From NCBI GenBank assembly GCA_002269645.1, contig NIVC01001569.1, positions 1 to 64,000 of the forward strand: DNA of 64,000 nucleotides. The letters run 5' to 3'. The DNA is from Macrostomum lignano. Taxonomy: Eukaryota. A program made the position numbers and the translations under genes. Shown here piece by piece: positions 1,715 through 44,952 of the stretch. Position 1 is the first letter of the stretch. The number at the start of each line of letters is the position of its first letter. The notes beneath the pieces were generated by a model. The model was not told the origin of the DNA and did not search any database. It saw only the letters and a program-made list of their open reading frames with translations.

Positions 1715-5570
<3,856 letters not shown>

Positions 5571-11107: not shown

Positions 11108-14100
11108 ATGGACAACAATAATAACAACGTTAACATGCTGCCGCAGCCGCACGGTGGATCAGCTTTCACCGCGTATTCTCGTCGCTCCTTGCAGCCACAA
11201 CCAGTCTCAACTTCAAGCTCTCACGCTGCTACTGCTAGTCCACATACACAACAAGCAATAGCAGTTCACCGTCCTCAGCAGCACTGTGTGCACCATCCGA
11301 ATCAACATCCGCAGCAGCAGCACCAGCTTTATCCGCCGCATCTTCAACCGCCGCAATTTTCGCCTCGGCCATCTCTGCAGCACAAATGGCACTCCTATTG
11401 GCACGATTGGCAGCATTATTACTCCCATAACTATCCAATGCCAATACCAATGCCTATTATTAATCAGCATCATCCAGTTAGCCCGGCCGTCAGTCCTACA
11501 ATCCGGCCTGTACTGATCCCGCCCGCTCAGCCAGTTTATTATCCGCAAACGCAACAGGCAGCTGTGCCCCATTATCAATATCGCCATTGTCCTCCCCAGC
11601 AGTTGGGCCAGCAGAGTCGTTTCGCCGCTCCCTCTGGCAGGAGCAGTTTGCCAATGTCGGCCTCAGCAAAATCGGCTGCTGGCGGCAAGCCGCCTCTGCG
11701 CGCGGCCAGGCGACTGAATCAAGACCAGTTGAGACCGGGCGGTAATCGTAGAGCAACAATAAGCGCCATGACAGCTGTGGAACCGTTGGATCTTAGAATT
11801 GCTAGCAAGTGTAATGCCAGCAGCAGCACTACTAGCTCTGTTGCCACTGTTACTAATATCGCTTTGACAACAGGATTGTCTTCCTCGGCTCAGAAAGCTT
11901 CGCTGTCGCAATGGTGAGTTTAACTGTGTTGCTTTTGTCATTTTTTTAATAATGTCTTTGTCCACTTCCTTATTCACTGTCCTCAGCAGCTCCCCACCTT
12001 CATCTGCCCCTCCATTCACTTCACTGTACTCAGCAGCTCCCCACCCACATCCACCCCTCGGCCTTATCCGCCCCCAATTCGCTGTCATCAGCAGCTCCCC
12101 CTCATCCGCCCCTCATCCGCTCCTCATCCACCCCTATTCACTGTCCTCAGCAGCTCCCCACCCTCATCCGCCCCTTATCCGCCCCCCATTCACTGTCCTC
12201 AGCAGCTCCCCACCCTCATCCGCCCTTATCCGCCCCCCATTCACTGTCCTCAGCAGCTCCCCACCCTCATCCGCCCCTTATCCGCCCCTCAGTCACTGTC
12301 CTCAGCAGCTCCCCACCCTCATCCGCCCCTCAGTCACTGTCCTCAGCAGCTCCCCACCCTCATCCGCCCCTTATCCGCCCCCCTCATTCACTGTCCTCAG
12401 CAGCTCCCCACCCTCATCCGCCCCTTATCCGTCCCCCTCATTCACTGTCCTCAGCAGCTCCCCACCCTCATCCGCCCCTTATCCGCCCCCTCATTCACTG
12501 TCCTCAGCAGCTCCCCACCCTCATCCGCCCCTTATCCGTCCCCCTCATTCACTGTCCTCAGCAGCTCCCCACCCTCATCCGCCCCTTATCCGCCCCCTCA
12601 TTCACTGTCCTCAGCAGCTCCCCACCCTCATCCGCCCCTTATCCGCCCCCATTCACTGTCCTCAGCAGCTCCCCACCCTCATCCGCCCCTTATCCGCCCC
12701 TTCATTCATTCACTGTCCTCAGCAGCTCCCCACCCTCATCCGCCCCTTATCTGCCCCTCATTCACTGTCCTCAGCAGCTCCCCACCCTCATCCGCCCCTT
12801 ATCCGCCCCCCATTCACTGTCCTCAGCAGCTCCCCACCCTCATCCGCCCCTTATCCGCCCCCCATTCACTGTCCTCAGCAGCTCCCCACCCTCATCCGCC
12901 CCTTATCCGCCCCTCAGTCACTGTCCTCAGCAGCTCCCCACCCTCATCCGCCCCTTATCCGCCCCTCAGTCACTGTCCTCAGCAGCTCCCCACCCTCATC
13001 CGCCCCTTATCCGCCCCTCAGTCACTGTCCTCAGCAGCTCCCCACCCTCATCCGCCCCTCAGTCACTGTCCTCAGCAGCTCCCCACCCTCATCCGCCCCT
13101 TATCCGCCCCCCTCATTCACTGTCCTCAGCAGCTCCCCACCCTCATCCGCCCCTTATCTGCCCCTCATTCACTGTCCTCAGCAGCTCCCCACCCTCATCC
13201 GCCCCTTATCCGCCCCCCCTCATTCACTGTCCTCAGCAGCTCCCCACCCTCATCCGCCCCTTATCCGCCCCCCCTCATTCACTGTCCTCAGCAGCTCCCC
13301 ACCCTCATCCGCCCCTTATCCGCCCCCTCATTCACTGTCCTCAGCAGCTCCCCACCCTCATCCGCCCCTTATCTGCCCCTCATTCACTGTCCTCAGCAGC
13401 TCCCCAGCATCGGGAAGACAGCAGAAGCAGCCAAGTAATTCGGAGCCAGCAGCGACCGAAGCCAGTTCGTCAATGGCTGTCAAGAAGGCCTGGTTGCACA
13501 AGTGGGCTGAGCAACAGATGGAGAAAAAGCAAATGCCGCCACCGATGCAGCCTCCTATTATGCGGAATTTGCCCAAACAGAAGCAGGCTAACATTGATGA
13601 GTCAGAATCGAACAGTTCAGGTACAGCGGCGGCGACAGCTGGGAACTCCAGGCCGACAGCAAAGGTGAGTTAGTAATTAATTAATTTATACTACCTTACT
13701 GCATACCTAAAAATCTCTAAAATCGTTCAACACTTTAATTACACAAAAAAAGTATAGGCAGGTAGATGACCTGCGGCCAGCAAAGCCTCCCTGATCCTTT
13801 GAAACTTTACAATAGCAATCTGGCTCGCTCAATATTTGTCTCTTCTAAGCTCTCCGCTCTGCTCTTGTAGATAAAGACTTGGCCATTGGAGTAGTTGAAG
13901 TCTTATTAGCCCACCTGGGAATGTGTATAAAGACTCAGCTATTAGAGTAGCTGAAGTCTTATTAGCCCACCTGGGAATGTGTATAAAGACTCAGCTATTA
14001 GAGTAGCTGTAAAAGTGTCATTAGCCCACCTGGGAATGTGTATAAAGACTCAGCTATTAGAGTAGCTGTAAAAGTGTCATTAGCCCACCTGGGAATGTGT

Positions 14101-17100
14101 ATAAAGACTCAGCTATTAGAGTAGCTGTAAAAGTGTCATTAGCCCACCTGGGAATGTGTATAAAGACTCAGCTATTAGAGTAGCTGTAAAAGTGTCATTA
14201 GCCCACCTGAGAATGTGTATAAAGACTCAGCTATTAGAGTAGCTGGTGTCATTAGCCCACCTGAGAATGTGTATAAAGACTCAGCTATTAGAGTAGCTGT
14301 AAAAGTGTCATTAGCCCACCTGGGAATGTGTATAAAGACTCAGCTATTAGAGTAGCTGTAAAAGTGTCATTAGCCCACCTGGGAATGTGTATAAAGACTC
14401 AGCTATTAGAGTAGCTGTAAAAGTGTCATTAGCCCACCTGGGAATGTGTATAAAGACTCAGCTATTAGAGTAGCTGTAAAAGTGTCATTAGCCCACCTGA
14501 GAATGTGTATAAAGACTCAGCTATTAGAGTAGCTGTAAAAGTGTCATTAGCCCACCTGAGAATGTGTATAAAGACTCAGCTATTAGAGTAGCTGTAAAAG
14601 TGTCATTAGCCCACCTGGGAATGTGTATAAAGACTCAGCTATTAGAGTAGCTGTAAAAGTGTCATTAGCCCACCTGAGAATGTGTATAAAGACTCAGCTA
14701 TTAGAGTAGCTGTAAAAGTGTCATTAGCCCACCTGAGAATGTGTATAAAGACTCAGCTATTAGAGTAGCTGTAAAAGTGTCATTAGCCCACCTGGGAATG
14801 TGTATAAAGACTCAGCTATTAGAGTAGCTGTAAAAGTGTCATTAGCCCACCTGAGAATGTGTATAAAGACTCAGCTATTAGAGTAGCTGTAAAAGTGTCA
14901 TTAGCCCACCTGGGAATGTGTATAAAGACTCAGCTATTAGAGTAGCTGTAAAAGTGTCATTAGCCCACCTGGGAATGTGTATAAAGACTCAGCTATTAGA
15001 GTAGCTGTAAAAGTGTCATTAGCCCACCTGGGAATGTGTATGTGCATAAAGACTCAGCTATCAGAGTAGCTGAAGTGTCAAACGCCCACACCTAAGATGT
15101 GGATATCAGATATGGGTAAAGGCTTCGTCTAATAACAGAATAGGTGAAATCCTCAGACTACTTGAGAATGTTGAAGTCACTGAACAGATGTAAACAGTCT
15201 ATTATACATAATTGACTGCATCGCATGATTAACACAAACACGACGCAGGCATCCAGAAAGCGGCAGTCGATCACTCTACCTACAATGTTACGATCATCCA
15301 AGACTGCCGCCGCGGCCTCAGCACTGACGGCAACGAGGCCTAAAGAGGCATCAGCTGGGAGGGCGTCGGATGGCGAGACCCTGCTATCGTTAGCATCGGT
15401 TGCTAACACGGCTAAGAGACGGTTGAGCTTGTCGACTGCAACTGCCATGAGCGGCGCTGACGGTAAAAAATCTCCACAAAATCCAGAAAATTAAAAAACC
15501 CCAATAATATAAAATATTTATCTTAATCTCCCTATAGGATAAATGAATAAACCACAATTGTATACCTGTAAAATGTAAAATCCTCTCGCCCGTCCCCACC
15601 TGCCAACAGAGAGCAGCAGATCAACAGAAGGTCAGGTGGATGCCAGCCAGACTCTCGTAGCTCTGCAGGGCAACACCTGCCGGGAGCTGGTCTACACTCG
15701 GCTGCCCCTGTGTAGAGACTGCCGGCTGATAGCCACGCCTCCGGTGGCCCAGCCCAGCTGCCGGTTCAAGGAGTTTAGAAAGTGAGCTCGATTAAATGCA
15801 CCCAAGCAGTGCAGCTCTACTTTTGTGCTTGGAGAATCTTTTAATTTCCCAATTGAGAATCGCCCCTGATCCCATTGAGAATCGCCACTGATCCCATTGA
15901 GAATCGCCCCTGATCTCATTGAGAATCGCCACTGATCCCATTGAGAATCGCCACTGATCCCATTGAGAATCGCCCCTGATCCCATTGAGAATCGCCACTG
16001 ATCCCATTGAGAATCGCCATTGATCCCATTGAGAATCGCCCCTGATCTCATTGAGAATCGCCCCTGATCCCATTGAGAATCGCCATTGATCCCATTGAGA
16101 ATCGCCACTGATCCCATTGAGAATCGCCCCTGATCCCATTGAGAATCGCCATTGATCCCACTGAGAATCGCCCCTGATCTCATTGAGAATCGCCCCTGAT
16201 CCCATTGAGAATCGTCACTGATCCCATTGAGAATCGCCATTGATCCCATTGAGAATCGCCATTGATCCCATTGAGAATCGTCACTGATCCCATTGAGAAT
16301 CGCCATTGATCCCATTGAGAATCGTCACTGATCCCATTGAGAATCGCCACTGATCCCATTGAGAATCGCCATTGATCCCATTGAGAATCGCCACTGATCT
16401 CATTGAGAATCGCCCCTGATCCCATTGAGAATCGCCACTGATCCCATTGAGAATCGCCATTGATCCCATTGAGAATCGCCATTGATCCCATTGAGAATCG
16501 CCATTGATCCCATTGAGAATCGCCACTGATCCCATTGAGAATCGCCACTGATCCCATTGAGAATCGCCCCTGATCCCATCCCATTGAGAATCGCCACTGA
16601 TCCCATTGAGAATCGCCACTGATCCCATTGAGAATCGCCACTGATCCCATTGAGAATCGCCACTGATCCCATTGAGAATCGCCATTGATCCCATTGAGAA
16701 TCGCCATTGATCCCATTGAGAATCGTCACTGATCCCATTGAGAATCGCCATTGATCCCATTGAGAATCGTCACTGATCCCATTGAGAATCGCCACTGATC
16801 CCATTCAGAATCGCGATTGATCCCATTGAGAATCGCCCCTGATCTCATTGAGAATCGCCCCTGATCCCATTGAGAATCGCCACTGATCCCATTGAGAATC
16901 GCCACTGATCCCATTGAGAATCGCCACTGATCCCATTGAGAATCGCCATTGATCCCATTGAGAATCGCCCCTGATCCCATCCCATTGAGAATCGCCACTG
17001 ATCTCATTGAGAATCGCCCCTGATCCCATTGAGAATCGCCACTGATCCCATTGAGAATCGCCATTGATCCCATTGAGAATCGCCATTGATCCCATTGAGA

Positions 17101-20100
17101 ATCGCCATTGATCCCATTGAGAATCGCCACTGATCCCATTGAGAATCGCCACTGATCCCATTGAGAATCGCCCCTGATCCCATCCCATTGAGAATCGCCA
17201 CTGATCCCATTGAGAATCGCCACTGATCCCATTGAGAATCGCCACTGATCCCATTGAGAATCGCCACTGATCCCATTGAGAATCGCCATTGATCCCATTG
17301 AGAATCGCCATTGATCCCATTGAGAATCGTCACTGATCCCATTGAGAATCGCCATTGATCCCATTGAGAATCGTCACTGATCCCATTGAGAATCGCCACT
17401 GATCCCATTCAGAATCGCGATTGATCCCATTGAGAATCGCCCCTGATCTCATTGAGAATCGCCCCTGATCCCATTGAGAATCGCCACTGATCCCATTGAG
17501 AATCGCCACTGATCCCATTGAGAATCGCCACTGATCCCATTGAGAATCGCCATTGATCCCATTGAGAATCGCCCCTGATCCCATCCCATTGAGAATCGCC
17601 ACTGATCCCATTGAGAATCGCCACTGATCCCATTGAGAATCGCCATTGATCCCATTGAGAATCGCCATCTGACTTCATTAAGAATCCAGAATCCCTATAA
17701 AGTACATTATGACTATAACTTATCCAGGCTGCGCCTATGCCAAGGCGTGCTCACGGTGGCGGGTTTCTGCTCCCTAGGCGATGTGACACCAGCTGACACG
17801 GCTGACTGGCGAGTCGAACCGGCCCCGCCGACGGCAACATCCTCAGCAGCCACCGCCGCCGCTGCAACCTCATCGCCGCAGCACAAGTTGCACCGAGACG
17901 TGGCTGCCAAGCAGTTGACGCTGCTTCTGCCGCCGCTGCACCAGCTGCTTCAACGAGAATCGGCCGCGGTAGCTCGCTGGGCCGGCAGCGACCTGAACCA
18001 GCTGCTCTGGCGTAGGAAAAAGAAACAACAGAGGCGGCAGCCGATGACCGATTTGTGAGTCTGTGATTTTGTTTATGGAAAATTAACTAAAAATTGCTGA
18101 ATGTTTCATAATTCAAATCCCATTTCATAATCTAAAAGCTGAAATGTCACTTTAATCATCCCAATCAAGAATCCTCATCAAAAATCCCAATCTGAAATCC
18201 AATCGATAATATCCCTATCTAAAATCACATAGATAATATCCCTATTTGAAATCCCATCGATAATATCCCTATTTGAAATCCCATCGATAATATCCCTATC
18301 TGAAATCCCATCGATAATATCCCTATCTGAAATCCCATCGATAATATCCCTATCTGAAATCACATCGATAATATCCCTATCTGAAATCCCATCGATAATA
18401 TTCCTATCTGAAATCCCATCGATAATATCCCTATCTGAAATCCCATCGATAATATCCCTATCTGAAATCCCATCGATAATATCCCTATTTGAAATCCCAT
18501 CGATAATATCCCTATCTGAAATCCCATCGATAATATCCCTATCTGAAATCCCATCGATAATATCCCAATCTGAAATCCCATCGATAATATCCCTATCTGA
18601 AATCACATCGATAATATCCCTATTTGAATTCGCCATGATCCAGGTCCCGCTGCCTGGAGCCGGAGCCGCCGGTCAATCAAATCCCACCTGAGGAGCAGTG
18701 CACCAGATGCGGCAGCCCAATATTTAGCATGCACCTGGCCTGCCTAGAATGCGGCTACAGTCTCTGTCTGACGTGCTCAAATTCCCTAGCTAACTATCCC
18801 GACCAGCAGCCTCAGCAGCAGCAGCAATTCAGCGAGGACTGCCCCTCTTGGCGGCACTGCCCAGACCGCATGAAACCAGTTTGCCTTATGCGGCCGGACT
18901 ATCTGGCTAATCTGGCTCGAGCTGCCGATCAGTTAGCAGAGGATCTGGTGGCTAAAAATCCTCATTCCGACCCGGGGGCCACTGATGAAGCTGGCAATGT
19001 TGACAGCAGCAAGCCTGGGGATTGCGCTGTGCGATTGTCCGTGCCTTTAGCCTCGCTTGCCGACTTTCAAACTCGTTGGATTAAGCGGCTGCCGATTGTG
19101 CTAACAGGATGCCTGAAGCCTGCGAACAGCGGTGCCGAGTAAGTAAAAGAGGGACATCTCGTACTTTATTAACTGGTACAAATATATAAAGAGCAGATAC
19201 ACCTGAAGGGACAGGGGAAGAGGGAGTGCACAGGGAGAGGGGAAGAGGGGGTGCACAGGGAGAGGGGAAGAGGGAGTGCACAGATAGAGGGGAAGAGAGA
19301 GTGCACAGGGAGAGGGGAAGAGGGAGTGCACAGGGAGAGGGGAAGAGGGGGTGCACAGGGAGAGGGGAAGAGGGAGTGCACAGATAGAGGGGAAGAGAGA
19401 GTGCACAGGGAGAGGGGAAGAGGGGGTGCACAGGGAGAGGGGAAGAGGGAGTGCACAGATAGAGGGGAAGAGAGAGTGCACAGGGAGAGGGGAAGAGGGA
19501 GTGCACAGGGAGAGGGGAAGAGGGAGTGCACAGGGAGAAGGCAAGAGGGAGTGCACAGGGAGAGAGGAAGAGGGAGTGCACAGGGAGATCGAAGAAGAGG
19601 GAGTGCTCAGGGAGAGGGGAAGAGGGAGTGCACAGGGAGAGGGGAAGAGGGAGTGCACAGGGAGAGGGGAAGAGGGAGTGCACAGGGAGAGGGGAAGAGG
19701 GAGTGCACAGGGAGAGGGGAAGAGGTGGTGCACAGAGGGAGAGAGGAGAAGAGGGGTGCACAGGGAGAGAGGGGAAGAGGGGTGCACAGGGAGAGGGGAA
19801 GAGGGAGTGCACAGGGAGAGGGGAAGAGGGAGTGCACAGGGAGAGGGGAAGAGGTGGTGCACAGAGGGAGAGAGGAGAAGAGGGGTGCACAGGGAGAGAG
19901 GGGAAGAGGGAGTGCACAGGGAGAGGGGAAGAGGTGGTGCACAGAAGGAGAGAGGAGAAGAGGGTGCACAGGGAGAGGGGAAGAGGTGGTGCACAGAGGG
20001 AGAGAGGAGAAGAGGGGTGCACAGGGAGAGAGGGGAAGAGGGAGTGCACAGGGAGAGGGGAAGAGGGAGTGCACAGGGAGAGGGGAAGAGGGAGTGCACA

Positions 20101-23100
20101 GGGAGAGAGGGGAAGAGGGAGTGCACAGGGAGAGAGGAGAAGAGGGGTGCACAGGGAGAGAGGGGAAGAGGGAGTGCACAGGGAGAGGGGAAGAGGGAGT
20201 GCACAGGGAGAGGGGAAGAGGGAGTGCACAGATAGAGGGGAAGAGAGAGTGCACAGGGAGAGGGGAAGAGGGAGTGCACAGGGAGAGGGGAAGAGGGGTG
20301 CACAGGGAGAGGGAAGAGGGAGTGCACAGATAGAGGGGAAGAGAGAGTGCACAGGGAGAGGGGAAGAGGGGTGCACAGGGAGAGGGGAAGAGGGAGTGCA
20401 CAGATAGAGGGGAAGAGAGAGTGCACAGGGAGAGGGGAAGAGGGAGTGCACAGGGAGAGGGGAAGAGGGAGTGCACAGGGAGAAGGCAAGAGGGAGTGCA
20501 CAGGGAGAGAGGAAGAGGGAGTGCACAGGGAGATCGAAGAAGAGGGAGTGCTCAGGGAGAGGGGAAGAGGGAGTGCACAGGGAGAGGGGAAGAGGGAGTG
20601 CACAGGGAGAGGGGAAGAGGGAGTGCACAGGGAGAGGGGAAGAGGGAGTGCACAGGGAGAGGGGAAGAGGTGGTGCACAGAGGGAGAGAGGAGAAGAGGG
20701 GTGCACAGGGAGAGAGGGAAGAGGGGTGCACAGGGAGAGGGGAAGAGGGAGTGCACAGGGAGAGGGGAAGAGGGAGTGCACAGGGAGAGGGGAAGAGGTG
20801 GTGCACAGAGGGAGAGAGGAGAAGAGGGGTGCACAGGGAGAGAGGGGAAGAGGGAGTGCACAGGGAGAGGGAAGAGGTGGTGCACAGAGGGAGAGAGGAG
20901 AAGAGGGGTGCACAGGGAGAGGGGAAGAGGTGGTGCACAGAGGGAGAGAGGAGAAGAGGGGTGCACAGGGAGAGAGGGGAAGAGGGAGTGCACAGGGAGA
21001 GGGGAAGAGGGAGTGCACAGGGAGAGGGGAAGAGGGAGTGCACAGGGAGAGGGGAAGAGGGAGTGCACAGGGAGAGAGGGGAAGAGGGAGTGCACAGGGA
21101 GAGAGGAGAAGAGGGGTGCACAGGGAGAGAGGGGAAGAGGGAGTGCACAGGGAGAGGGGAAGAGGGAGTGCACAGGGAGAGGGGAAGAGGGAGTGCACAG
21201 GGAGAGGGGAAGAGGGAGTGCACAGGGAGAGGGGAAGAGGGAGTGCACAGGGAGAGGGGAAGAGGGTGCACAGGGAGAGGGGAAGAGGGAGTGCACAGGG
21301 AGAGGGGAAGAGGGGTGCACAGGGAGAGGGGAAGAGGGAGTGCACAGGGAGAGGGGAAGAGGGAGTGCACAGGGAGAGGGGAAGAGGTGGTGCACAGAGG
21401 GAGAGAGGAGAAGAGGGGTGCACAGGGAGAGAGGGGAAGAGGGGTGCACAGGGAGAGGGGAAGAGGGAGTGCACAGGGAGAGGGGAAGAGGGAGTGCACA
21501 GGGAGAGGGGAAGAGGTGGTGCACAGAGGGAGAGAGGAGAAGAGGGGTGCACAGGGAGAGAGGGGAAGAGGGAGTGCACAGGGAGAGGGGAAGAGGTGGT
21601 GCACAGAGGGAGAGAGGAGAAGAGGGGTGCACAGGGAGAGGGGAAGAGGTGGTGCACAGAGGGAGAGAGGAGAAGAGGGGTGCACAGGGAGAGAGGGGAA
21701 GAGGGAGTGCACAGGGAGAGGGGAAGAGGGAGTGCACAGGGAGAGGGAAGAGGGAGTGCACAGGGAGAGAGGGGAAGAGGGAGTGCACAGGGAGAGAGGA
21801 GAAGAGGGGTGCACAGGGAGAGAGGGGAAGAGGGAGTGCACAGGGAGAGGGGAAGAGGGAGTGCACAGGGAGAGGGGAAGAGGGAGTGCACAGGGAGAGG
21901 GGAAGAGGGGTGCACAGGGAGAGGGGAAGAGGGAGTGCACAGGGAGAGGGGAAGAGGGGTGCACAGGGAGAGGGGAAGAGGGAGTGCACAGGGAGAGGGG
22001 AAGAGGGAGTGCACAGGGAGAGGGGAAGAGGGGTGCACAGGGAGAGGGGAAGAGGGAGTGCACAGGGAGAGGGCAAGAGAGAGTGCACAGGGAGAGGGGA
22101 AGAGGGAGTGCACAGGGAGAGGGGAAGAGGGAGTGCACAGGGAGAGGGGAAGAGGGAGTGCACAGGGAGAGGGGAAGAGGGAGTGCACAGGGAGAGGGGA
22201 AGAGGGAGTGCACAGGGAGAGGGGAAGAGGGAGTGCACAGGGAGAGGGGAAGAGGGAGTGCACAGGGAGAGGGGATTAGAAATTAGCCGACTAAACTTGA
22301 ACTATAATATTGCTGGCACTATGTACCGCCAACAGCAGTGGGGAGTCGCTGTGTCTCCCAAACAGCAGCGCCAGCAGCCAGCCTCGCCAGTGTTTCAACT
22401 CCGCTCTGATCGACTGCATCAGCGGCGCGCCCGTGACTCCACCTACTGGCCAGACAGCCGAGACCACTTTCTGGTGCTACAGCTCTAATGAGGAGGCCGG
22501 CACAGCCGCCAGGCTGCGACTGATACAGTGGCCAGCGCCGAGCGACGCTGAAGCCCTGCTGAAACAGCTGGTGCCCGATTATATCAGGTTGGTTGCTAGG
22601 GCTCCAGTAGGTTAATGACCGACTGCTTAAGTAGCTTTATGATCACGACTGACCCCAGTAGCTTTATGACCCCGACCCCAGTAGCTTTATGACCCCGACT
22701 GACCCCAGTAGCTTTATGACCCCGACTAACTCCATCGGATTTATGAATTGGTTGCTTTAGTATTAGTACCTTTACTGACGGTGTGGACAGAAAAACCTAG
22801 CAGAGATAAGTGGCCCATCTAAATTAATGGCTTCATAAACAAAGTACCCATGCTACCACACGCCAACCACCACCGACATCTGCCCAGTCCGCATGGCTGC
22901 TTCAACATGGCTTTGCGCAAGTTTCAAACAGCCTCCAGATTGGTTAGTGGGCACCGCGGAAGCGACTGCTATCTGCGCATCGCCTCCCGCGACATTGTCA
23001 GTCTGGCCCTGCTGCCTCCGTCAGCCTCGAGCGTCTCGGATGACCAGCCAGTTGCAGCTGTGTGGCACGTGTTCCATAGCGAGTCACTGCGCCAGCTCAA

Positions 23101-24918
23101 TGAACAAATATACCAGTTGGAGCTGCAGACTGTCAGGTACGACCTATCGTCTCTGACTTCGCTTCATTTAGGGACCTGACACCTGTGATTGCTTGATTTA
23201 GGGACCTGGCACCTGTGATTGCTTGATTTAGGGACCTGGCACCTGTGATTGCTTGATTTAGGGACCTGGCACCTGTGATTGCTTGATTTAGGGACCTGGC
23301 ACCTGTGATTGCTTGATATTTAGGGACCTGACACCTTTATTTGCTTGATAATTAGGGACCTGACACTTGTGATTGCTTGATATTCAGGGACCTGACACCT
23401 GTGATTGCTTGATTTAGGGACCTTGCACCTGTGATTGCTTGATATTTAGGGACCTGACACCGGTCATAATTTAGCTAGATTTAGGGACCTGACAACTGTG
23501 ATTGCTTGATAATTAGGAACCTGACAACTGTCATAGCCCGATTTAGGGACCTGACACCTGTGATTGCTTGATATTTAGGAACCTGACACCTGCAATTGCT
23601 TGATATTTAGGAACCTGACACCTGTGATTGCTTGATAATTAGGGACCTGACAACTGTGATTGCTTGATAATTAGGAACCTGACACCGGTCATAATTTAGC
23701 TAGATTTAGGGACCTAACGCCTGTCATAGCTAGATTTAGGGACCTGACGCCTGTCATAGCCCGATTTAGGGACCTGACACCTGTGATTGCTTGATATTTA
23801 GGAACCTGAAACTTTTAATTGCTTGATAATTAGGAACCTGACACCGGTCATAGCCCGATTTAGGGACCTGACACCTCTAATTGCTTGATATTTAGGGACC
23901 TGACACCTGACACCTGTCATAGCTTGATTTAGGGACCTAACACTTGATCATAGCTTGATTTAGGGACCTGACACTTGATCATAGCTTGATTTAGGGACCT
24001 GACACTTGATCATAGCTTGATTTAGGGACCTGACACTTGATCATAGCTTGATTTAGAGACCTAACACTGGATCATAGCTTGATTTAGAGACCTAACACCT
24101 GTAACTTGACATGGATCTGATTCACCAATTTGACCTATTATGAGCCATTCTGCTCACCGTTAACCCCCCCCCCTTCATACTATTCAGATATCTGGACGAC
24201 TTAAGTCTGACTCGACTGGCTGGCGTAGCTCCGCTGCAGCCGCCGCCAATTGTGCTGCGCCAGCGCTGCGGCGAGGCGGTGCTGCTGCCTGCGGGATGCG
24301 CCTTTCAGGTTCGTCCATGTAGTTTCTTTTGCTGGGGTGACTGGGGTAGCAGATGCAGACTCGCGGATACTGATGGAGCGGAGATGCATATTCAAGGATA
24401 TTGATTGATTGGGCAGATGTGCAACCGATAGCACAGCCGCAGCTATTGCGCCGCGCATCTGAAGGCTGCGTACGGCTGTTCAGTCCAAGGACTGGGGGGC
24501 GGGGGGGGGTCGCCACACACACCTTCAATTACCCCAGCTAATGCTGGCACCCATTTTACAGCTGGGTGAACTGAAGCAATGCAGAGTTCAGTGTCTTGCT
24601 CATGGACTTGTTCGAAGTGGGTCGTGAATCGAACCCCCGACCTTTCAGTCGTGAGTCCGACTCTCTAGCCTAGTACAACCCCCTCCCCTCTCTAAGGATA
24701 CTGAGTTTATCCTAATCGATATCACACCTCTTCAAACCCATTCTGTCCCGCAGTTCCGCTTCGAGATGACGGGCACCCAGGCTCAGACGGATTTCAGCAG
24801 CGCAGAGTCCATGGCGCAGTGCCTGGCCAGCAATTGGACGGGCGTGCTAGCGCACGACGACTGCCTGGAGATGAGCCTGTTCCAGCGGGTTCGCCTCTGC
24901 ATTTCCAGCCTTGAGTGA
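11108..24918 (+). CDS. KDM3/JMJD1/Hairless-family zinc-finger + JmjC protein, predicted catalytically inactive
   Basis: Exons 11108-11913, 13397(or 13400; or 11987)-13664, 15249-15462, 15610-15781, 17728-18054, 18644-19138, 22336(or 22339)-22587, 22888-23136, 24188-24308, 24754-24918; all junctions phase-consistent. KDM3-like motifs: LQGNTC...LCRDCR...CRFKEFRK|LRL...LTVAGF; C6 finger EQCTRCGSPIFSMHLACLECGYSLCLTC; FQTRWIKRLPIVLTG; LIDC...TFW; LRLIQWP; LVPDYI|SPHGCFNMA; AAVWHVF; YLD...LRQRCGEAVLLPAGCAFQ; TDFSSAE...HDDCLE. Long Q/H/P-rich N-terminus. Confidence 0.88.
11970..13406. repeat. About 52-bp C-rich minisatellite containing a 3' splice site in every unit
   Basis: About 28 copies of ATTCACTGTCCTCAGCAGCTCCCCACCCTCATCCGCCCCTTATCCGCCCC. 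Confidence 0.92.
13905..15085. repeat. 59-bp minisatellite, intronic
   Basis: About 19 near-identical copies of ATTAGCCCACCTGGGAATGTGTATAAAGACTCAGCTATTAGAGTAGCTGTAAAAGTGTC; no spacers. Confidence 0.93.
15849..17668. repeat. 22-bp minisatellite (GATCCCATTGAGAATCGCC[AC][CT]T) with higher-order duplication
   Basis: About 80 copies filling intron 15782-17727. Confidence 0.95.
18185..18625. repeat. 27-bp minisatellite (GAAATCCCATCGATAATATCCCTATCT)
   Basis: About 16 copies in intron 18055-18643. Confidence 0.92.
19208..22273. repeat. About 25-bp polypurine minisatellite (GTGCACAGGGAGAGGGGAAGAGGGA), about 3 kb
   Basis: Fills intron 19139-22335; source of the spurious 600-1060 aa ORFs. Confidence 0.95.
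23165..24105. repeat. About 30-32-bp minisatellite (GATTTAGGGACCTGACACCTGTGATTGCTT)
   Basis: Fills intron 23137-24187; a separate short 27-bp array lies at about 22625-22745. Confidence 0.88.
24420..24670 (-). mobile_element. tRNA-derived SINE, family A, copy 2 (last intron of the KDM3-like gene)
   Basis: Close homology to 3786-4046 over about 250 bp. Confidence 0.75.
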
Positions 24919-28829: not shown

Positions 28830-31800
28830 ATGGCTTCTTCTGGAGGCAGCAACAGCAGCCAGATTGGCTGGCCCTTTGCCAGCGGTGATAGCAGCAGCCA
28901 TGGCAGCAGCAACAGTTTGCGCACTGCTGACATTGCGGTTGATGCAGCCACTGCTGCCATAGCTAGGCTGCATTCGCCTTCACAGACTGCTGGGCACGAG
29001 CAGCCGAAATTGCAGCAGCAGCAACAGAAGCAGCAGTCTATCTACAAGTGAGTTTTTGCTTGGACTGAGTTGGAAATAGTTTCTATCTAGATGGTTACTG
29101 GTTTCAGTAAAGGTATTGCTTTTACTAACCCCCAAGCACTGAGCATACATGCGCAACCCCCCTGATTTACACTGGCCATGCGACTTACCTGTGAAAGAAA
29201 CCCTAAAAAAGTAACGCAATTTTGGGTATACGGCAGGAGTAACTATGACTGATATTAGGGCTAAAATGCCTCGTCATCTAAGTAGTACTACGTCTGTATT
29301 CCTTCGGGTGGGCATTTTTTTGACTCACCCCTTGTCCGCCACAATTTACAGTGCCTCAGCGCTGAGACCTGTAAGAGAGGTCCATTTATCTCCATTTATA
29401 GATAACTACTAATTAGATGACGAAGCATTCGTATCTAATAAGACGTTCATAGTTACTCCCGCTGTTTACCCGTTTTCAATGGTTTGTTTTTAAGTTATGC
29501 TTTCAATTAAAGTTTATGCTTATGTCATACCAATATTGCAGATACGTGCTTGGCCGAGAAATTGGCATAGGCAGCTACAGCAAAGTCTTGGTTGGCCACG
29601 GACCAGATGGACCAGTTGCGCTAAAACAGATTCGCGTGTCCAATAGCAGCGGCCTGCCCTATAGTACTATGAGAGAATTGGTCATATTGAAACCGCTGTC
29701 AAAATTGCGTCATCAAAATATTGTAGCACTTATTGACGTGTTACTGCAGCAGCATGGCAAAGACTATTATCTGTTTCTAGTGTTCGAGCTGCTGCACTGC
29801 GATTTGCAAATCTATTTGTCCAGGCATCGAATGGGACCCGTGAGTTTGAGTAGACATACTCCGGATACTCCCTGTCTGAGTAGACATGCTCCCTGTTTTA
29901 GTAGACATGTCCCTGTTTGAGTAGACATGCTCCCTGTTTGAGTAGACATGCTCCCTGTTTGAGTAGACATGCTCCCTGTTTGAGTAGACATGCTCCCTGT
30001 TTGAGTAGACATGCTCCCTGTTTGAGTAGACATGCTCCCTGTTTGAGTAGACATGTCCCTGTTTGAGTAGACATGCTCCCTGTTTGGGTAGACATGTCCC
30101 TGTTTGGGTAGACATGCTCCCTGTTTGGGTAAACATGCTCCCTGTTTGAGTAGACATGCTCCCTGTTTGAGTAGACATGTCCCTGTTTGAGTAGACATGC
30201 TCCCTGTTTGAGTAGACATGCTCCCTGTTTGAGTAGACATGCTCCCTGTTTGAGTAGACATGCTCCCTATTTGAGTAGACATGCTCCCTGTTTGAGTAGA
30301 CATGCTCCCTGTTTGAGTAGACATGCTCCCTGTTTGAGTAGACATGCTCCCTGTTTGAGTAGTCATACTCCCTGTTGAGTAGACATGTCCCTGTTGAGTA
30401 GACATGCTGGCCGTTTGAGTAGTCATACTCCCTGTTGAGTAGACATCCTCCCTGTTTGAGTAGACATGCTCCCTGTTTGAGTAGACATGTCCCTGTTTGA
30501 GTAGACATGCTCCCTGTTTGAGTAGACATGCTCCCTGTTTGAGTAGACATGTCCCTGTTTGAGTAGACATGCTCCCTATTTGAGTATACATGCTCCCTAT
30601 TTGAGTAGACATGCTCCCTGTTTGAGTAGTCATACTCCCTGTTGAGTAGACATGTCCCTGTTGAGTAGACATGCTCCCTGTTTGAGTAGACATGCTGGCC
30701 GTTTGAGTAGTCATACTCCCTGTTTGAGTAGTCATACTCCCTGTTTGAGTAGACATGCTCCCTCTTTGTCTAGTTATACTCGTATTTTAAGTAGCTATCC
30801 TCCTAGTCAATCCAAAGTAATTCTTCCTCAAGATCCCCAGTTTGAGCAGCGTCAGTCTATCAAGTTCCTTAGCTGTTTGAGCAGCGTCAGTCCATCAAGT
30901 TCCTTAGCTGTTTGAGCAGTGTCAGTCTCCATCAAGTTTCCCAGTTTGAGCAGTGTCAGTCTCCATCAAGTTTCCCAGTTTGAGCAGTGTCAGTCTCCAT
31001 CAAGTTTCCCAGTTTGAGCAGTGTCAGTCTCCATCAAGTTTCCCAGTTTGAGCAGTGTCAGTCTCCATCAAGTTTCCCAGTTTGAGCAGTGTCAGTCTCC
31101 ATCAAGTTCCCCAGTTTGAGCAGTGTCAGTCTCCATCAAGTTTCCCAGTTTGAGCAGTGTCAGTCTCCATCAAGTTTCCCAGTTTGAGCAGTGTCAGTCT
31201 CCATCAAGTTTCCCAGTTTGAGCAGTGTCAGTCTCCATCAAGTTCCCCAGTTTGAGCAGTGTCAGTCTCCATCAAGTTTCCCAGTTTGAGCAGTGTCAGT
31301 CTCCATCAAGTTTCCCAGTTTGTGCAGTGTCAGTCTCCATCAAGTTTCCCAGTTTGAGCAGTGTCAGTCTCCATCAAGTTTCCCAGTTTGAGCAGTGTCA
31401 GTCTCCATCAAGTTCCCCAGTTTGAGCAGTGTCAGTCTCCATCAAGTTTCCCAGTTTGAGCAGTGTCAGTCTCCATCAAGTTTCCCAGTTTGAGCAGTGT
31501 CAGTCTCCATCAAGTTCCCCAGTTTAAGCAGTGTCAGTCTCCATCCAGCTCTCCAGTTTGAGCAGTCAGTCGCATTACTCATTTCAGTCGGCTGTTCGAA
31601 ATCTTGGGCATCAGCTGATGCTCGGCCTGGACTTTCTACACAGGCATCGAATCGTTCATCGTGATTTGAAGCCGCAGAATTGTCTGCTAAATCAACAGTG
31701 CACAGTGCTCAAAATTGCCGACTTCAACATGGCCAGAGCTTGCTCCTGGGAGAAACAGGTAAGTCGTTTTACATTTAAACAATCAACTTAATGCATTGAT

Positions 31801-36294: not shown

Positions 36295-37168
36295 CGATTT
36301 GAGAAATTGAGATTGAAAGCGATTGATTAAATATTGGTTTTTGCAACGTACACAGGTAAGGAGGGTAAGATTGAAAACAATTGATTACAACTTGGCTTTA
36401 ACAACATACATAGGTATAGTAGGTAGGAGAGAGAATTATAGATTGAGATTGAAAGTTAAACCATATGCGTAGGTTATTCTTTGCCTCTTTCAATCGTAAC
36501 ATCCGGGTCGTCTTCCACACGAACAAGATTAGGAACTTTGTTAGCAGATTAAAGTCGCGTGTTCCTTGTACTCTGCGTGCAGATGTTGTCTACCAATTTA
36601 ACTGCTCTGTGGACCAGAGCGTCTCCTATGTGGGGAAAACCAAAAGACACCTACACACGAGGATCAGGGAACACTGGCTCAAACCATCTGCTATACAAAC
36701 TCACCTCCTTGAATGCACTAACTGCAATGACTGCAAACCAGAAGAACACTTTAAAATCATTGACCAAAGCCATATTGACGCCAAACTTAGAATTCTCGAG
36801 GCCCTGCACATAAAAGCTCAGACCCCGAATCTCAATACCCAATTACAACATAGTGGTGCAGGTCACGTTCTCCACGTTTTCTGAACAGTGAGTGACACAG
36901 TCGTGCACGCTGTGTACACTTAGCTTGATGTTCAATTACCTAAGCTAGCTACCGCCCCTGATTCTGCCTTTTGACCACTGGACAAGAATTGTGTACATTT
37001 GGTTTAACTTTCAATCTCAATCTATAATTCTCTCTCCTACCTACTATACCTATGTATGTTGTTAAAGCCAAGTTGTAATCAATTGTTTTCAATCTTACCC
37101 TCCTTACCTGTGTACGTTGCAAAAACCAATATTTAATCAATCGCTTTCAATCTCAATTTCTCAAATCG

Positions 37169-41428: not shown

Positions 41429-43124
41429 ATGGACAATGAATTGCCAATGCCCCTGGTGCCAGCAGATCGGGTTAACCTTCGCCTCCTATTAGTGTCAGGA
41501 GAAGTTCATAATTTCCTATTTAATCCAGATGACTGTGCTCAAGAGATAACTGATTTTGTGTTTCACAACTGGCCTGAAGGTAGGTGAATTTAAGCTGAGT
41601 GATTTTGGGGAATGTCAATATTTTATTAATTATACATCAAGAGGGAAATTATACTCGTACAGGATATCATTAAAAATCAGAGATAGATCAGAGATGGGAG
41701 AGATAGATCAGAGATGGGAGAAACAGATCAGAGATGGGAGAGATAGATCAGAGATGGGAGAGATAGATCAGAGATGGGAGAGATAGATCAGAGATGGGAG
41801 AGATAGATCAGAGATGGGAGAGATAGATCAGAGATGGGAGAGATAGATCAGAGATGGGAGAGATAGATCAGAGATGGGAGAGATAGATCAGAGATGGGAG
41901 AGATAGATCAGAGATGGGAGAGATAGATCAGAGATGGGAGAGATAGATCAGAGATGGGAGAGATAGATCAGAGATGGGAGAGATAGATCAGAGATGGGAG
42001 AGATAGATCAGAGATGGGAGAGATAGATCAGAGATGGGAGAGATAGATCAGATATGGGAGAGATAGATCAGAGATGGGAGAGATAGATCAGAGATGGGAG
42101 AGATAGATCTGAGATGGGAGAGGTAGATCTGAGATGGGAGAAACAGATCTGAGATACGAGAGATAATCAGAAATGTTTTTCAGTGAACACTCTAGGTTGC
42201 TCAACCACCCCCCCCCCAGACTGGTCGTCGGCTGAGCGGCCAGACTCCAACATCCTTCGCCTCATCTATCACGGCCGATTCCTTCATCCCAGTGTGACCC
42301 TGTCTGCCCTGCGCCTGCCGCTTGGCAAGACCACTGTCATGCACCTGGTCTCCAGGGAGACAGCTCCGCCCCAGCCTGCTGATGGTGAGCTCTGGGGTGT
42401 CAGGCTGGGTCTGATTGCAGTGCTGAGTGTGTCAGACTGGGTCTGATTGCAGTGCTGAGTGTGTCAGATTGAGTCTGCTTGCAGTGCTGAGTGTGTCAGG
42501 CTGGGTCTGATTGCAGTGCTGAGTGTGTCAGGCTGGGTCTGATTGCAGTGCTGAGTGTGTCAGACTGCGTCTGATTGCAGTGCTGAGTGTGTCAGACTGG
42601 ATCTGATTGCAGTGCTGAGTGTGTCAGGCTGGGTCTGATTGCAGTGCTGAGTGTGTCAGACTGCGTCTGATTGCAGTGCTGAGTGTGTCAGACTGCGTCT
42701 GATTGCAGTGCTGAGTGTGTCAGACTGGATCTGATTGCAGTGCTGAGTGTGTCAGACTGGGTCTGATTGCAGTGCTGAGTGTGTCAAACTGGGTCTGATT
42801 GCAGTGCTGAGTGTGTCAGACTGGGTCTGATTGCAGTGCTGAGTGTGTCAGACTGGGTCTGATTGCAGTGCTGAGTGTGTCAGACTGGGTCTGATCACAA
42901 TGCTGAGTGTGTCAGATTGAGTCACACTAGTTAAATAAGTTAAATTGCGCACTTACTCTGCATCGAAATTCTTTGATCTCAATAACGTCGACTTAGCTGT
43001 GTCAACTGTTATCAGTAAATAAAGATAATTAATCTATAACTATTAATTAAATAATTTTATTTCAGAAGAGCGCCGCAACTCAAAGCGCAGCGACAGCGGC
43101 TGTCATTGCTGCGCAGTTCTGTGA
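41429..43124 (+). CDS. UBL3: Ubiquitin-like protein 3 (membrane-anchored ubiquitin-fold, CaaX)
   Basis: Exons 41429-41579, 42220-42384, 43066-43124 (both introns phase 1): MDNELPMPLVPADRVNLRLLLVSGEVHNFLFNPDDCAQEITDFVFHNWPE|DWSS...NILRLIYHGRFLHPSVTLSALRLPLGKTTVMHLVSRET...|ERRNSKRSDSGCHCCAVL*; ends in a CCAVL prenylation/palmitoylation motif. Confidence 0.95.
41682..42170. repeat. 20-bp minisatellite (AGATAGATCAGAGATGGGAG)
   Basis: UBL3 intron 1. Confidence 0.93.
42398..42920. repeat. 32-bp minisatellite (ACTGGGTCTGATTGCAGTGCTGAGTGTGTCAG)
   Basis: UBL3 intron 2, about 16 copies. Confidence 0.92.
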
Positions 43125-44707: not shown

Positions 44708-44952
44708 GAGTAGAGCTCAGTAGTTAGAGCGTCGGACTCACGACTTGTAGGTTGGGGGTTCGATTCTCGACCCAACTCGGAACAATTTGTGTCCTGGAGC
44801 AAGGCGATTAAACTCTGCATTGCTTCAGTTCACCCAGCTGTAACATGGATGCCAGCACTAGCTGATATAATTGAGGGAGTATGTGGCGACCGGCCCCCTG
44901 CAGTCCTTTGGACTGAACAGCCGTACGCAGCCTTCAGATGCGCCGCGCAATA
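44708..44952 (+). mobile_element. tRNA-derived SINE, family A, copy 3
   Basis: A-box-like GAGCTCAGTAGTTAGAGC, B-box-like GGTTCGATTCTC, same central and 3' blocks (GGACTGAACAGCCGTACGCAGCCTTCAGATGCGCCGCGCAATA). Confidence 0.75.

What the first reader, a model, noticed from the sequence alone, without database searches (positions are those of the whole stretch)
17728..24918. KDM3/Hairless-family JmjC protein that has lost all three iron ligands (pseudo-demethylase)
Seen: the spliced JmjC aligns without gaps around the catalytic motifs of KDM3. GTTNLHLDVSDAVNV reads SDCYLRIASRDIVSL (His to Arg, Asp to Ala), PAGAPHQV reads PAGCAFQF (His to Phe), and the 2-oxoglutarate Lys of CIKVAEDF reads GTQAQTDF. 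The C6 zinc finger and the upstream Cys-rich CxxC/CRF block are intact, with no stop or frameshift over 10 exons. Established: the HxD...H triad is required for JmjC demethylation. Inference: a chromatin reader/scaffold that lost catalysis, in parallel to vertebrate Hairless or JARID2.
Basis: partly seen in the sequence, partly recalled or inferred. Interest (0 to 1): 0.7.

Follow-up and report, generated by a model that had tools for sequence, protein, structure and literature searches.

The report
Catalytically dead KDM3-like flatworm gene
The flatworm Macrostomum lignano has an intact, unannotated 10-exon gene related to the KDM3 histone H3K9 demethylases; it keeps the family's zinc finger and fold but has replaced all three iron-binding residues, so it almost certainly cannot demethylate, as is already known for other JmjC proteins.

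Summary
A 10-exon, all GT-AG, 1022-codon open reading frame (window 11108-24918, + strand) encodes a very diverged KDM3/JHDM2-type protein. The finding's coordinates cover only exons 5-10.

Homology is real but remote:
- hhalign against a KDM3 alignment gives probability 97.5%, E 5e-12, over the whole JmjC domain.
- A KDM3 HMM scores 26 bits, against at most 1.6 bits in 500 shuffles.
- The C2HC4 zinc finger has exactly the family's spacing.
- Identity to KDM3B is about 21-24%, whereas insect and echinoderm KDM3s keep about 60%.

All three Fe(II) ligands are replaced: His to Arg875, Asp to Ala877, His to Phe967. A near-invariant Lys is Gln977. No hidden exon with an intact HxD exists in the window.

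The window is Macrostomum lignano contig NIVC01001569.1:1-64000. The gene is absent from the protein libraries, but GenBank's annotation dropped repeat-overlapping transcripts, so that says nothing about expression.

Not testable here: expression, selection (dN/dS), and whether an intact paralogue exists. Dead KDM3-subfamily members are already known in plants.

Verdict: a real new member of a known kind, of moderate interest.

The parts
11108..11913 (+). Exon 1 (aa 1-269): predicted start ATG, Gln/Pro/His-rich low-complexity N-terminus
   Evidence: ORF, GT donor. Linked to the rest only by phase; no homology support.
13397..13664 (+). Exon 2 (aa 269-358). The acceptor lies in the last unit of a 52-bp minisatellite; alternatives are 13400, 13436 and 13466.
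15249..15462 (+). Exon 3 (aa 359-430)
15610..15781 (+).
   Evidence: The sequence is present. Conservation in KDM3 was not verifiable.
17728..18054 (+). Exon 5 (aa 487-596): Ala/Ser-rich linker with three clustered LxxLL motifs (LTLLL, LHQLL, LNQLL at 17915-18007) and a basic RRKKKQQRR stretch
18644..19138 (+). Exon 6 (aa 596-761): C2HC4 zinc finger CTRCGSPIFSMHLACLECGYSLCLTC (18699-18776), and the start of the JmjC region (FQTRWIKRLPIVLTG)
22336..22587 (+). Exon 7 (aa 761-845): JmjC N-terminal part (LRLIQWP opposite LKLKDWP). A NAGNAG acceptor makes 22339, 22363 and 22366 also possible.
22888..23136 (+). Exon 8 (aa 845-928): the HxD strand reads L-R875-I-A877 (codons 22976-22978 and 22982-22984). 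AAVWHVF lies opposite GALWHIY.
24188..24308 (+). Exon 9 (aa 928-968): YLD...GEAVLLPAGCAFQ; the distal His is Phe967 (24303-24305)
24754..24918 (+). Exon 10 (aa 969-1022 plus stop): GTQAQTDFSSAE opposite CIKVAEDFVSPE; the near-invariant Lys is Gln977 (24778-24780); C-terminal helix HDDCLEMSLFQRV opposite HEDKLQVKNIIYHAV

Best explanation
This is a protein-coding gene of Macrostomum lignano. It descends from a KDM3/JHDM2 histone H3K9me1/2 demethylase and has become a pseudo-enzyme.

Shown:
- It keeps the family architecture: a Cys-rich block, a C2HC4 zinc finger and a JmjC beta-barrel.
- It keeps many fold-determining residues: 4 of 5 invariant Trp, the PAG and WH motifs, and YLD.
- All three Fe(II) ligands are replaced (Arg, Ala, Phe).
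- A near-invariant Lys after the distal His is replaced.
- The Thr/Asn of the TTNLH strand are replaced.
- The RPDLGPKMYNAYG and DPIHDQ segments are deleted.

Inferred:
- It cannot bind iron or 2-oxoglutarate in the canonical way and does not demethylate.
- A 1022-codon frame across 10 canonically spliced exons has survived divergence to about 21-24% identity. The protein has therefore been kept by selection for a non-catalytic role.
- The most likely role is a zinc-finger/JmjC scaffold that binds partners or chromatin. It may act by pairing with or competing against an active KDM3, or by recruiting co-regulators through the LxxLL cluster.
For: Gene structure and open frame. Codon-position GC pattern: GC3 0.62-0.69 against GC2 0.51-0.53.

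Homology to KDM3:
- The best PDB hits are all JMJD1C.
- BLASTP to the KDM3B JmjC is colinear end to end.
- KDM3 HMM: E 1.9e-9 for the whole model with Z=1; 26.0 bits on the C-terminal 423 aa against at most 1.6 bits in 500 shuffles.
- hhalign: probability 97.5%, E 5.3e-12, 275 columns.
- Identical zinc-finger spacing.
- In a six-frame scan of the window, the two best ORFs are exons 9 and 8, with exons 7 and 10 also listed, all in HMM order.

Ligand substitutions.

Established knowledge: KDM3A H1120A/Y and KDM3B H1560A/D1562A are inactive (PMC3623819, PMC13149330). KDM3-subfamily members with mutated cofactor sites exist and are expressed in plants (PMC2579438).
Against: - There is no evidence of expression.
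- No protein containing exon 6 exists among 1.84 billion representatives, a library drawn from a collection that does hold annotated M. lignano proteins. This is weakened because the GenBank annotation excluded transcripts overlapping repeat annotations (PMC5730564).
- No orthologue or homeologue could be compared, so purifying selection is inferred only from the intact frame.
- Pfam's JmjC model does not reach any threshold.
- The loss of the triad is part of a general drift: only 33% of near-invariant columns are kept. That pattern would also fit a gene under very relaxed constraint.
- Exons 1-3 are unsupported by homology.
Confidence: 0.62

Rival explanations
1. It is a silent or recently inactivated gene copy. 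The frame happens still to be open, but the gene is no longer expressed or constrained, for example a redundant copy left after the genome duplications of M. lignano.
For: - It is absent from all protein libraries searched.
- It is extremely diverged, with low-complexity stretches.
- The genome is highly redundant: three copies of the neighbouring ARL15 region, and 180 Mb of duplicated blocks (PMC5730564).
- No AATAAA or ATTAAA lies within 480 nt after the stop.
Against: - A neutral sequence diverged to about 21% identity would not keep 1022 codons open across 10 exons with all splice sites canonical.
- The divergence from KDM3 is far older than the approximately 93% identity duplication.
- The coding GC3 > GC2 pattern persists.
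- Absence from the annotation is explained by the repeat filter.
Confidence: 0.2
2. It is still an oxygenase or demethylase that binds metal through non-canonical residues, for example the His867/Asp871 of GHRGSD just upstream, or Cys965 in PAGCAF.
For: Hairless has a Cys in place of the first His and is reported active (PMC8237996). A His, an Asp and a Cys do lie near the pocket strands.
Against: - All three canonical positions are changed at once, to Arg, Ala and Phe.
- The near-invariant Lys and the Thr/Asn of the TTNLH strand are also lost.
- HxxxD is not the i/i+2 geometry of the facial triad.
- Single-ligand mutants of KDM3A and KDM3B are already dead (PMC3623819, PMC13149330).
Confidence: 0.04
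3. It is a gene-model artefact. The true transcript would use other exons carrying an intact HxD...H, or the KDM3 similarity would be chance similarity of Cys-rich and low-complexity sequence.
For: The model was hand-built by choosing frame-preserving GT/AG sites. Several acceptors are ambiguous. Pfam finds no JmjC. Exhaustive phmmer with exon 6 found no KDM3.
Against: - The KDM3 HMM scan of all 1684 six-frame ORFs of the window finds only the model's own exons, in order, and no other KDM3-like ORF.
- hhalign E 5e-12.
- The shuffle control.
- Exact zinc-finger spacing.
- The ambiguous acceptors change one or a few residues far from the catalytic motifs.
Confidence: 0.05

Closest known systems
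KDM3A/KDM3B/JMJD1C (JHDM2 family H3K9me1/2 demethylases)
   Same: - Same order of parts: C2HC4 zinc finger with identical spacing, then a JmjC domain alignable end to end.
- Shared motifs: FQxxW..PV, LKLKDWP, Y..G.LN, WH, YLD, GDAV.IPAG..Q, DF.S.E and the C-terminal HEDKL helix.
- LxxLL motifs are present (from my own knowledge, KDM3A has one).
   Different: - About 21-24% identity, where animal KDM3s keep 50-60% with human.
- All three Fe(II) ligands and the near-invariant Lys are replaced.
- Two conserved segments are deleted.
- Shorter (1022 aa).
- Pfam's JmjC model does not reach threshold.
Plant KDM3-subfamily clades with mutated cofactor sites (AtKDM3A/AtKDM3B of Zhou & Ma 2008; from my own knowledge, JMJ24-type proteins)
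   Same: These are KDM3-subfamily proteins with a zinc finger plus JmjC in which the predicted iron and 2OG-binding residues have been replaced, yet the genes are expressed (PMC2579438; noted again in PMC3623819). This is the closest precedent for a dead KDM3.
   Different: They are an independent event in plants. Orthology is excluded by phylogenetic distance. From my own knowledge, the plant proteins carry a RING-type finger used for E3 ligase activity; nothing of that kind was shown here.
Hairless (HR, 'KDM3D')
   Same: A KDM3-subfamily member with a zinc finger, LxxLL-type interaction motifs and an atypical JmjC. It has long been discussed as a co-repressor or scaffold (PMC3623819).
   Different: The HR metal motif differs from KDM3A only by Cys for the first His, and HR is reported to demethylate H3K9me1/2 (PMC8237996). 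The flatworm protein has lost all three ligands. HR is, from my own knowledge, restricted to vertebrates.
JARID2
   Same: An animal JmjC protein that lacks cofactor-binding residues and works as a non-catalytic chromatin scaffold (cited in PMC3623819).
   Different: It belongs to a different JmjC subfamily (KDM5/JARID, with JmjN, ARID and a C5HC2 finger). There is no homology beyond the JmjC fold.

Membership tests
KDM3/JHDM2 subfamily of JmjC proteins | C2HC4 zinc finger (C-x2-C-x7-H-x2-C-x2-C-x4-C-x2-C) N-terminal to the JmjC domain | tested here: met
   identical spacing in the model (aa 615-640) and in 7 database KDM3s. It is the only such pattern in the six-frame translation of the window.
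KDM3/JHDM2 subfamily of JmjC proteins | JmjC domain homologous to KDM3 over its whole length | tested here: met
   hhalign probability 97.5%, E 5.3e-12, 275 columns. HMM 26 bits against at most 1.6 bits in shuffles. The best PDB hits are only JMJD1C. Caveat: Pfam PF02373 is not detected.
KDM3/JHDM2 subfamily of JmjC proteins | Fe(II) facial triad HxD...H | tested here: not met
   Arg875, Ala877 and Phe967 occupy the three positions. These columns are 94-100% conserved in 120 KDM3s.
   Gln977. Thr/Asn are replaced or gapped. Whether this Lys contacts 2OG was not verified.
KDM3/JHDM2 subfamily of JmjC proteins | H3K9me1/2 demethylase activity | not testable with these tools
   Needs a biochemical assay. 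Predicted absent from the mutant data in PMC3623819 and PMC13149330.
KDM3/JHDM2 subfamily of JmjC proteins | Conserved N-terminal Cys-rich (CxxC...CRF) block upstream of the finger | tested here: inconclusive
   The block is present in exon 4. No full-length KDM3 was available for comparison, and PDB gave no match.
JmjC pseudo-enzymes (JARID2, plant dead KDM3 clades) | JmjC fold retained while cofactor ligands are lost | tested here: met
   structural Trp/Pro/Gly/Tyr columns are partly kept (29 of 88 near-invariant columns) and the ligands are lost.
JmjC pseudo-enzymes (JARID2, plant dead KDM3 clades) | Expressed and under purifying selection | not testable with these tools
   Only indirect evidence: an intact 1022-codon frame over 10 exons. 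Homeologue and orthologues were out of reach.
Hairless (HR) | Cys replacing only the first His, with Asp and the distal His retained | tested here: not met
   All three positions are changed. HR motif as described in PMC8237996.

The most novel reading that the evidence does not exclude
The dead KDM3-like protein would be a selected, expressed regulator rather than a relic. One form: it is the only KDM3-lineage gene left in Macrostomum, so the lineage would have given up KDM3-type H3K9me1/2 demethylation but kept the scaffold. The other form: it is a dedicated non-catalytic partner that pairs with the active KDM3 or recruits nuclear receptors through its three clustered LxxLL motifs. Either way it would be the first animal KDM3-family member with a fully ablated Fe(II)/2OG site and a defined non-enzymatic role, in a transgenesis-amenable stem-cell model.
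Probability: 0.2. Interest if true: 0.55.

Novelty: new member of a known kind. Interest (0 to 1): 0.35.

Why it matters
Dead JmjC proteins such as JARID2 and the plant KDM3 clades show that the JmjC/zinc-finger scaffold has uses beyond catalysis. Non-catalytic roles of KDM3A, KDM3B and JMJD1C are actively debated. A naturally 'triple-mutant' KDM3 relative in Macrostomum lignano would give a clean natural experiment on what the KDM3 scaffold does without chemistry, because RNAi and transgenesis work in this flatworm. It also flags a real gene that the public annotation misses, probably because almost every intron holds a minisatellite. Without expression or selection data it remains a well-supported sequence-level observation of a known kind, not a surprise to specialists.

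Tried and rejected
Searches that found nothing or were uninformative:
- Pfam on single exon ORFs and on the whole spliced protein gave no JmjC hit, only sub-threshold Cys-finger families.
- The search for homologous proteins with the C-terminal 570 aa gave no hit, but the search hit its 8000-candidate ceiling. It was probably saturated by low-complexity words, so it is uninformative.
- Exhaustive phmmer with exon 6 against 1.84 billion representatives gave three marginal non-KDM3 hits. So there is no close relative or annotated copy in that library.
- The look-up of encoding contigs with the ORF 18729-19139 found nothing on record.
- Rfam and tRNA scans for taxon clues found nothing.
- PDB search with the exon 4-5 Cys-rich block found nothing relevant.
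- Literature and supplement searches for a M. lignano KDM3/JmjC found nothing.

- I tried to walk from ARL15 to the KDM3-like gene on the homeologous contig by looking up the spliced UBL3 protein. So no dN/dS and no pocket model.

Rejected ideas:
- A missed exon with HxD.
- Chance similarity.
- Absence from the annotation as evidence of no expression.


Full report
**What is there**

The region is eukaryotic. Short GC-rich open segments on the + strand are separated by AT-richer stretches packed with minisatellites.

I joined the open segments at frame-preserving GT/AG sites. This gives a 10-exon model with these exons: 11108-11913, 13397-13664, 15249-15462, 15610-15781, 17728-18054, 18644-19138, 22336-22587, 22888-23136, 24188-24308 and 24754-24918. 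The CDS is 3069 nt. It has 1022 codons, no internal stop, and every intron is GT...AG.

The finding's coordinates (17728-24918) are exons 5-10. Two acceptors are ambiguous by a few codons: exon 2, whose acceptor lies in the last unit of a minisatellite, and exon 7, which has a NAGNAG acceptor. Neither is near the catalytic motifs. Exons 1-3 are supported only by phase.

**Is it a KDM3 relative?**

Single-sequence searches are weak.
- Pfam finds no JmjC.
- phmmer against PDB puts only JMJD1C JmjC chains on top, at E 0.34, in three colinear stretches.
- An exhaustive phmmer of exon 6 against 1.84 billion representatives finds no KDM3.

Profile methods are clear.
- I confirmed that the KDM3B JmjC I recalled is PDB 6rbj_A 28-351.
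- I used it to collect 705 KDM3 proteins, of which the best 120 were returned, and built an HMM from those 120.
- The HMM scores the spliced model at E 1.9e-9 with Z=1.
- It scores the C-terminal 423 aa at 26.0 bits. The maximum in 500 shuffles is 1.6 bits, and the reversed sequence scores -3.5.
- hhalign of a 24-sequence KDM3 alignment against the model's zinc-finger plus JmjC region gives probability 97.5%, E 5.3e-12, and 275 aligned columns. These run from the 'FQxxWxxGxPV' start to the C-terminal 'HEDKLQ' helix.
- BLASTP to KDM3B is colinear over the whole domain at 21% identity.
- The family-specific finger C-x2-C-x7-H-x2-C-x2-C-x4-C-x2-C is present with identical spacing. It is the only such pattern in the six-frame translation of the window.

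Among all 1684 six-frame ORFs of the window, the two best matches to the KDM3 HMM are the ORFs of exons 9 and 8. Those of exons 7 and 10 are also listed, all in HMM order. Nothing else in the window resembles KDM3. Membership in the KDM3/JHDM2 lineage is therefore well supported.

The divergence is extreme. Insects, crustaceans and an echinoderm keep about 60% identity to human KDM3B in this domain. This protein keeps 21-24%.

**The catalytic residues**

Three alignments agree on the register.
- The first His (100% conserved in 120 KDM3s) is Arg875, codon 22976-22978.
- The Asp (94-100%) is Ala877, codon 22982-22984.
- The distal His (99-100%) is Phe967, codon 24303-24305.
- The near-invariant Lys ten residues later is Gln977, codon 24778-24780.

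One smaller MAFFT run shifted the HxD strand by one position. It still gave no HxD/E.

The Thr/Asn of 'TTNLH', and the Ser and Asn of 'SDAVN', are also lost. The 'RPDLGPKMYNAYG' and 'DPIHDQ' segments are deleted.

Of 88 columns that are at least 93% conserved in the family, the model keeps 29. These are mostly Trp (4 of 5), Pro, Gly, Tyr and Leu. Most conserved polar or charged columns have changed. The picture is a retained scaffold with a dismantled pocket. Statistically, though, the loss of the triad is not more specific than the general drift.

Established mutagenesis shows that KDM3A H1120A/Y and KDM3B H1560A/D1562A are inactive (PMC3623819, PMC13149330). Loss of catalysis is therefore a strong inference. 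I could not verify that the Lys is the 2OG ligand.

**Where it comes from**

The neighbouring ARL15-like gene is 97-100% identical to Macrostomum lignano proteins. Fetching their contigs shows that the window is exactly NIVC01001569.1:1-64000 of assembly Mlig_3_7 (GCA_002269645.1), with the same coordinates.

The ARL15 region exists in two more copies: a 99.9% identical contig (NIVC01004352.1) and a copy at about 93% identity (NIVC01000010.1). All three encode the identical ARL15 protein.

**Annotation and expression**

No protein containing exon 6 is in the libraries, although annotated M. lignano proteins are.

This is not evidence of silence. [quoted passage not shown] Seven of this gene's nine introns hold a minisatellite and an eighth holds a SINE-like repeat.

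My first homologue search had hit its candidate ceiling and is uninformative.

Indirect support for a living gene is the intact frame and a coding-like GC3 > GC2 pattern. A sequence that had drifted neutrally to about 21% identity could not have kept 1022 codons open across ten exons.

**What could not be done**

As a result I have no pocket model and no dN/dS. I also have no census for an intact KDM3 paralogue in M. lignano. Literature and supplements gave nothing on Macrostomum KDM3. Schistosoma mansoni is listed with a JMJD1B/KDM3 gene (PMC4159997), so flatworms do have the family.

**Comparison with what is known**

Catalytically dead JmjC proteins are a known kind.
- JARID2 is the standard animal example (PMC3623819).
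- Within the KDM3 subfamily itself, two plant clades have mutated cofactor sites yet are expressed (PMC2579438, PMC3623819).
Its metal motif differs from KDM3A only by a Cys for the first His, and it is reported to be an H3K9me1/2 demethylase (PMC8237996).

The flatworm gene is therefore a new member of a known kind. To my knowledge and within the searches made, it is the first animal KDM3-lineage gene described with all three ligands gone. It is also unannotated.

**Mechanism proposed**

Shown: a KDM3-derived zinc-finger/JmjC protein without a metal site.

Inferred: it is non-catalytic and is kept for a scaffold function. Candidates are partner or chromatin binding through the finger and barrel, competition or pairing with an active KDM3, or co-regulator recruitment through the three LxxLL motifs clustered in exon 5.

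Rivals are a silent or recently dead copy (0.2), non-canonical metal binding (0.04) and a model artefact (0.05).

**Verdict**

The finding is a new member of a known kind, with interest 0.35.

Noticed in passing
window 1-64000: The window is exactly Macrostomum lignano Mlig_3_7 contig NIVC01001569.1:1-64000. The ARL15 region (about 36.6-59.2 kb) also exists on NIVC01004352.1 (99.9% identical) and NIVC01000010.1 (about 93% identical). All three encode the identical 199-aa ARL15-like protein.
   Followed up: yes
window 12110-13406, 13898-15072, 15847-17686, 18184-18636, 19207-22275, 22630-22734, 23166-24102: Seven of the nine introns of the KDM3-like gene each hold a different minisatellite: units of 52, 59, 22, 27, 25, 27 and 32 bp, with up to about 120 copies and 3 kb. 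They open long spurious ORFs on both strands, for example the 1060-aa ORF at 19081-22263 (-). They probably explain why the gene was filtered from the GenBank annotation.
   Followed up: partly
window 24380-24700, 3786-4033 (+) and 44725-44952 (-): There are three copies (83-90% identical) of a roughly 250-bp SINE-like repeat with a tRNA-like end (GGTTCGATTC...). One copy sits in intron 9 of the KDM3-like gene. ARAGORN and Rfam call nothing there.
   Followed up: partly
window 17915-18007 (exon 5, aa 550-580): Three LxxLL motifs (LTLLL, LHQLL, LNQLL) lie within 31 residues, followed by a basic RRKKKQQRR stretch. LxxLL motifs mediate nuclear-receptor binding in KDM3A and Hairless. This may be chance in a Leu/Gln-rich helix.
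   Followed up: no
window about 29.5-32.1 kb (+), DFN at 31720-31728: A CDK4/6-like protein kinase gene (Pfam Pkinase E 7e-44 on roughly joined exons) has its DFG motif reading DFN ('KIADFNMARA'), while HRDLKPQN is intact. It may be another diverged or degenerate enzyme.
   Followed up: partly
window 2014-5567 (+): The upstream neighbour is a multi-PDZ-domain gene (Pfam PDZ E 4e-14 and 2e-8). It has a (CTGT)n-type microsatellite-filled intron around 4.7-5.1 kb.
   Followed up: partly
window 41429-43124 (+) and about 46.6-49.2 kb (+): A UBL3-like gene (annotated 124-aa Rad60-SLD_2 product; three exons reconstructed) and an ARL15-like GTPase gene. Both are well conserved, in contrast with the KDM3-like gene.
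   Followed up: partly
window 36453-36881 (+): An ORF with a weak GIY-YIG match (Pfam E 5e-4, below cutoff), of the kind carried by Penelope-like retroelements.
   Followed up: no
window 56670-57023 (+): A Cys-rich ORF ('CSGNSDCPPGQCCG...CKPASADSDCPTG') reminiscent of prokineticin/astakine-type domains. No Pfam hit.
   Followed up: partly
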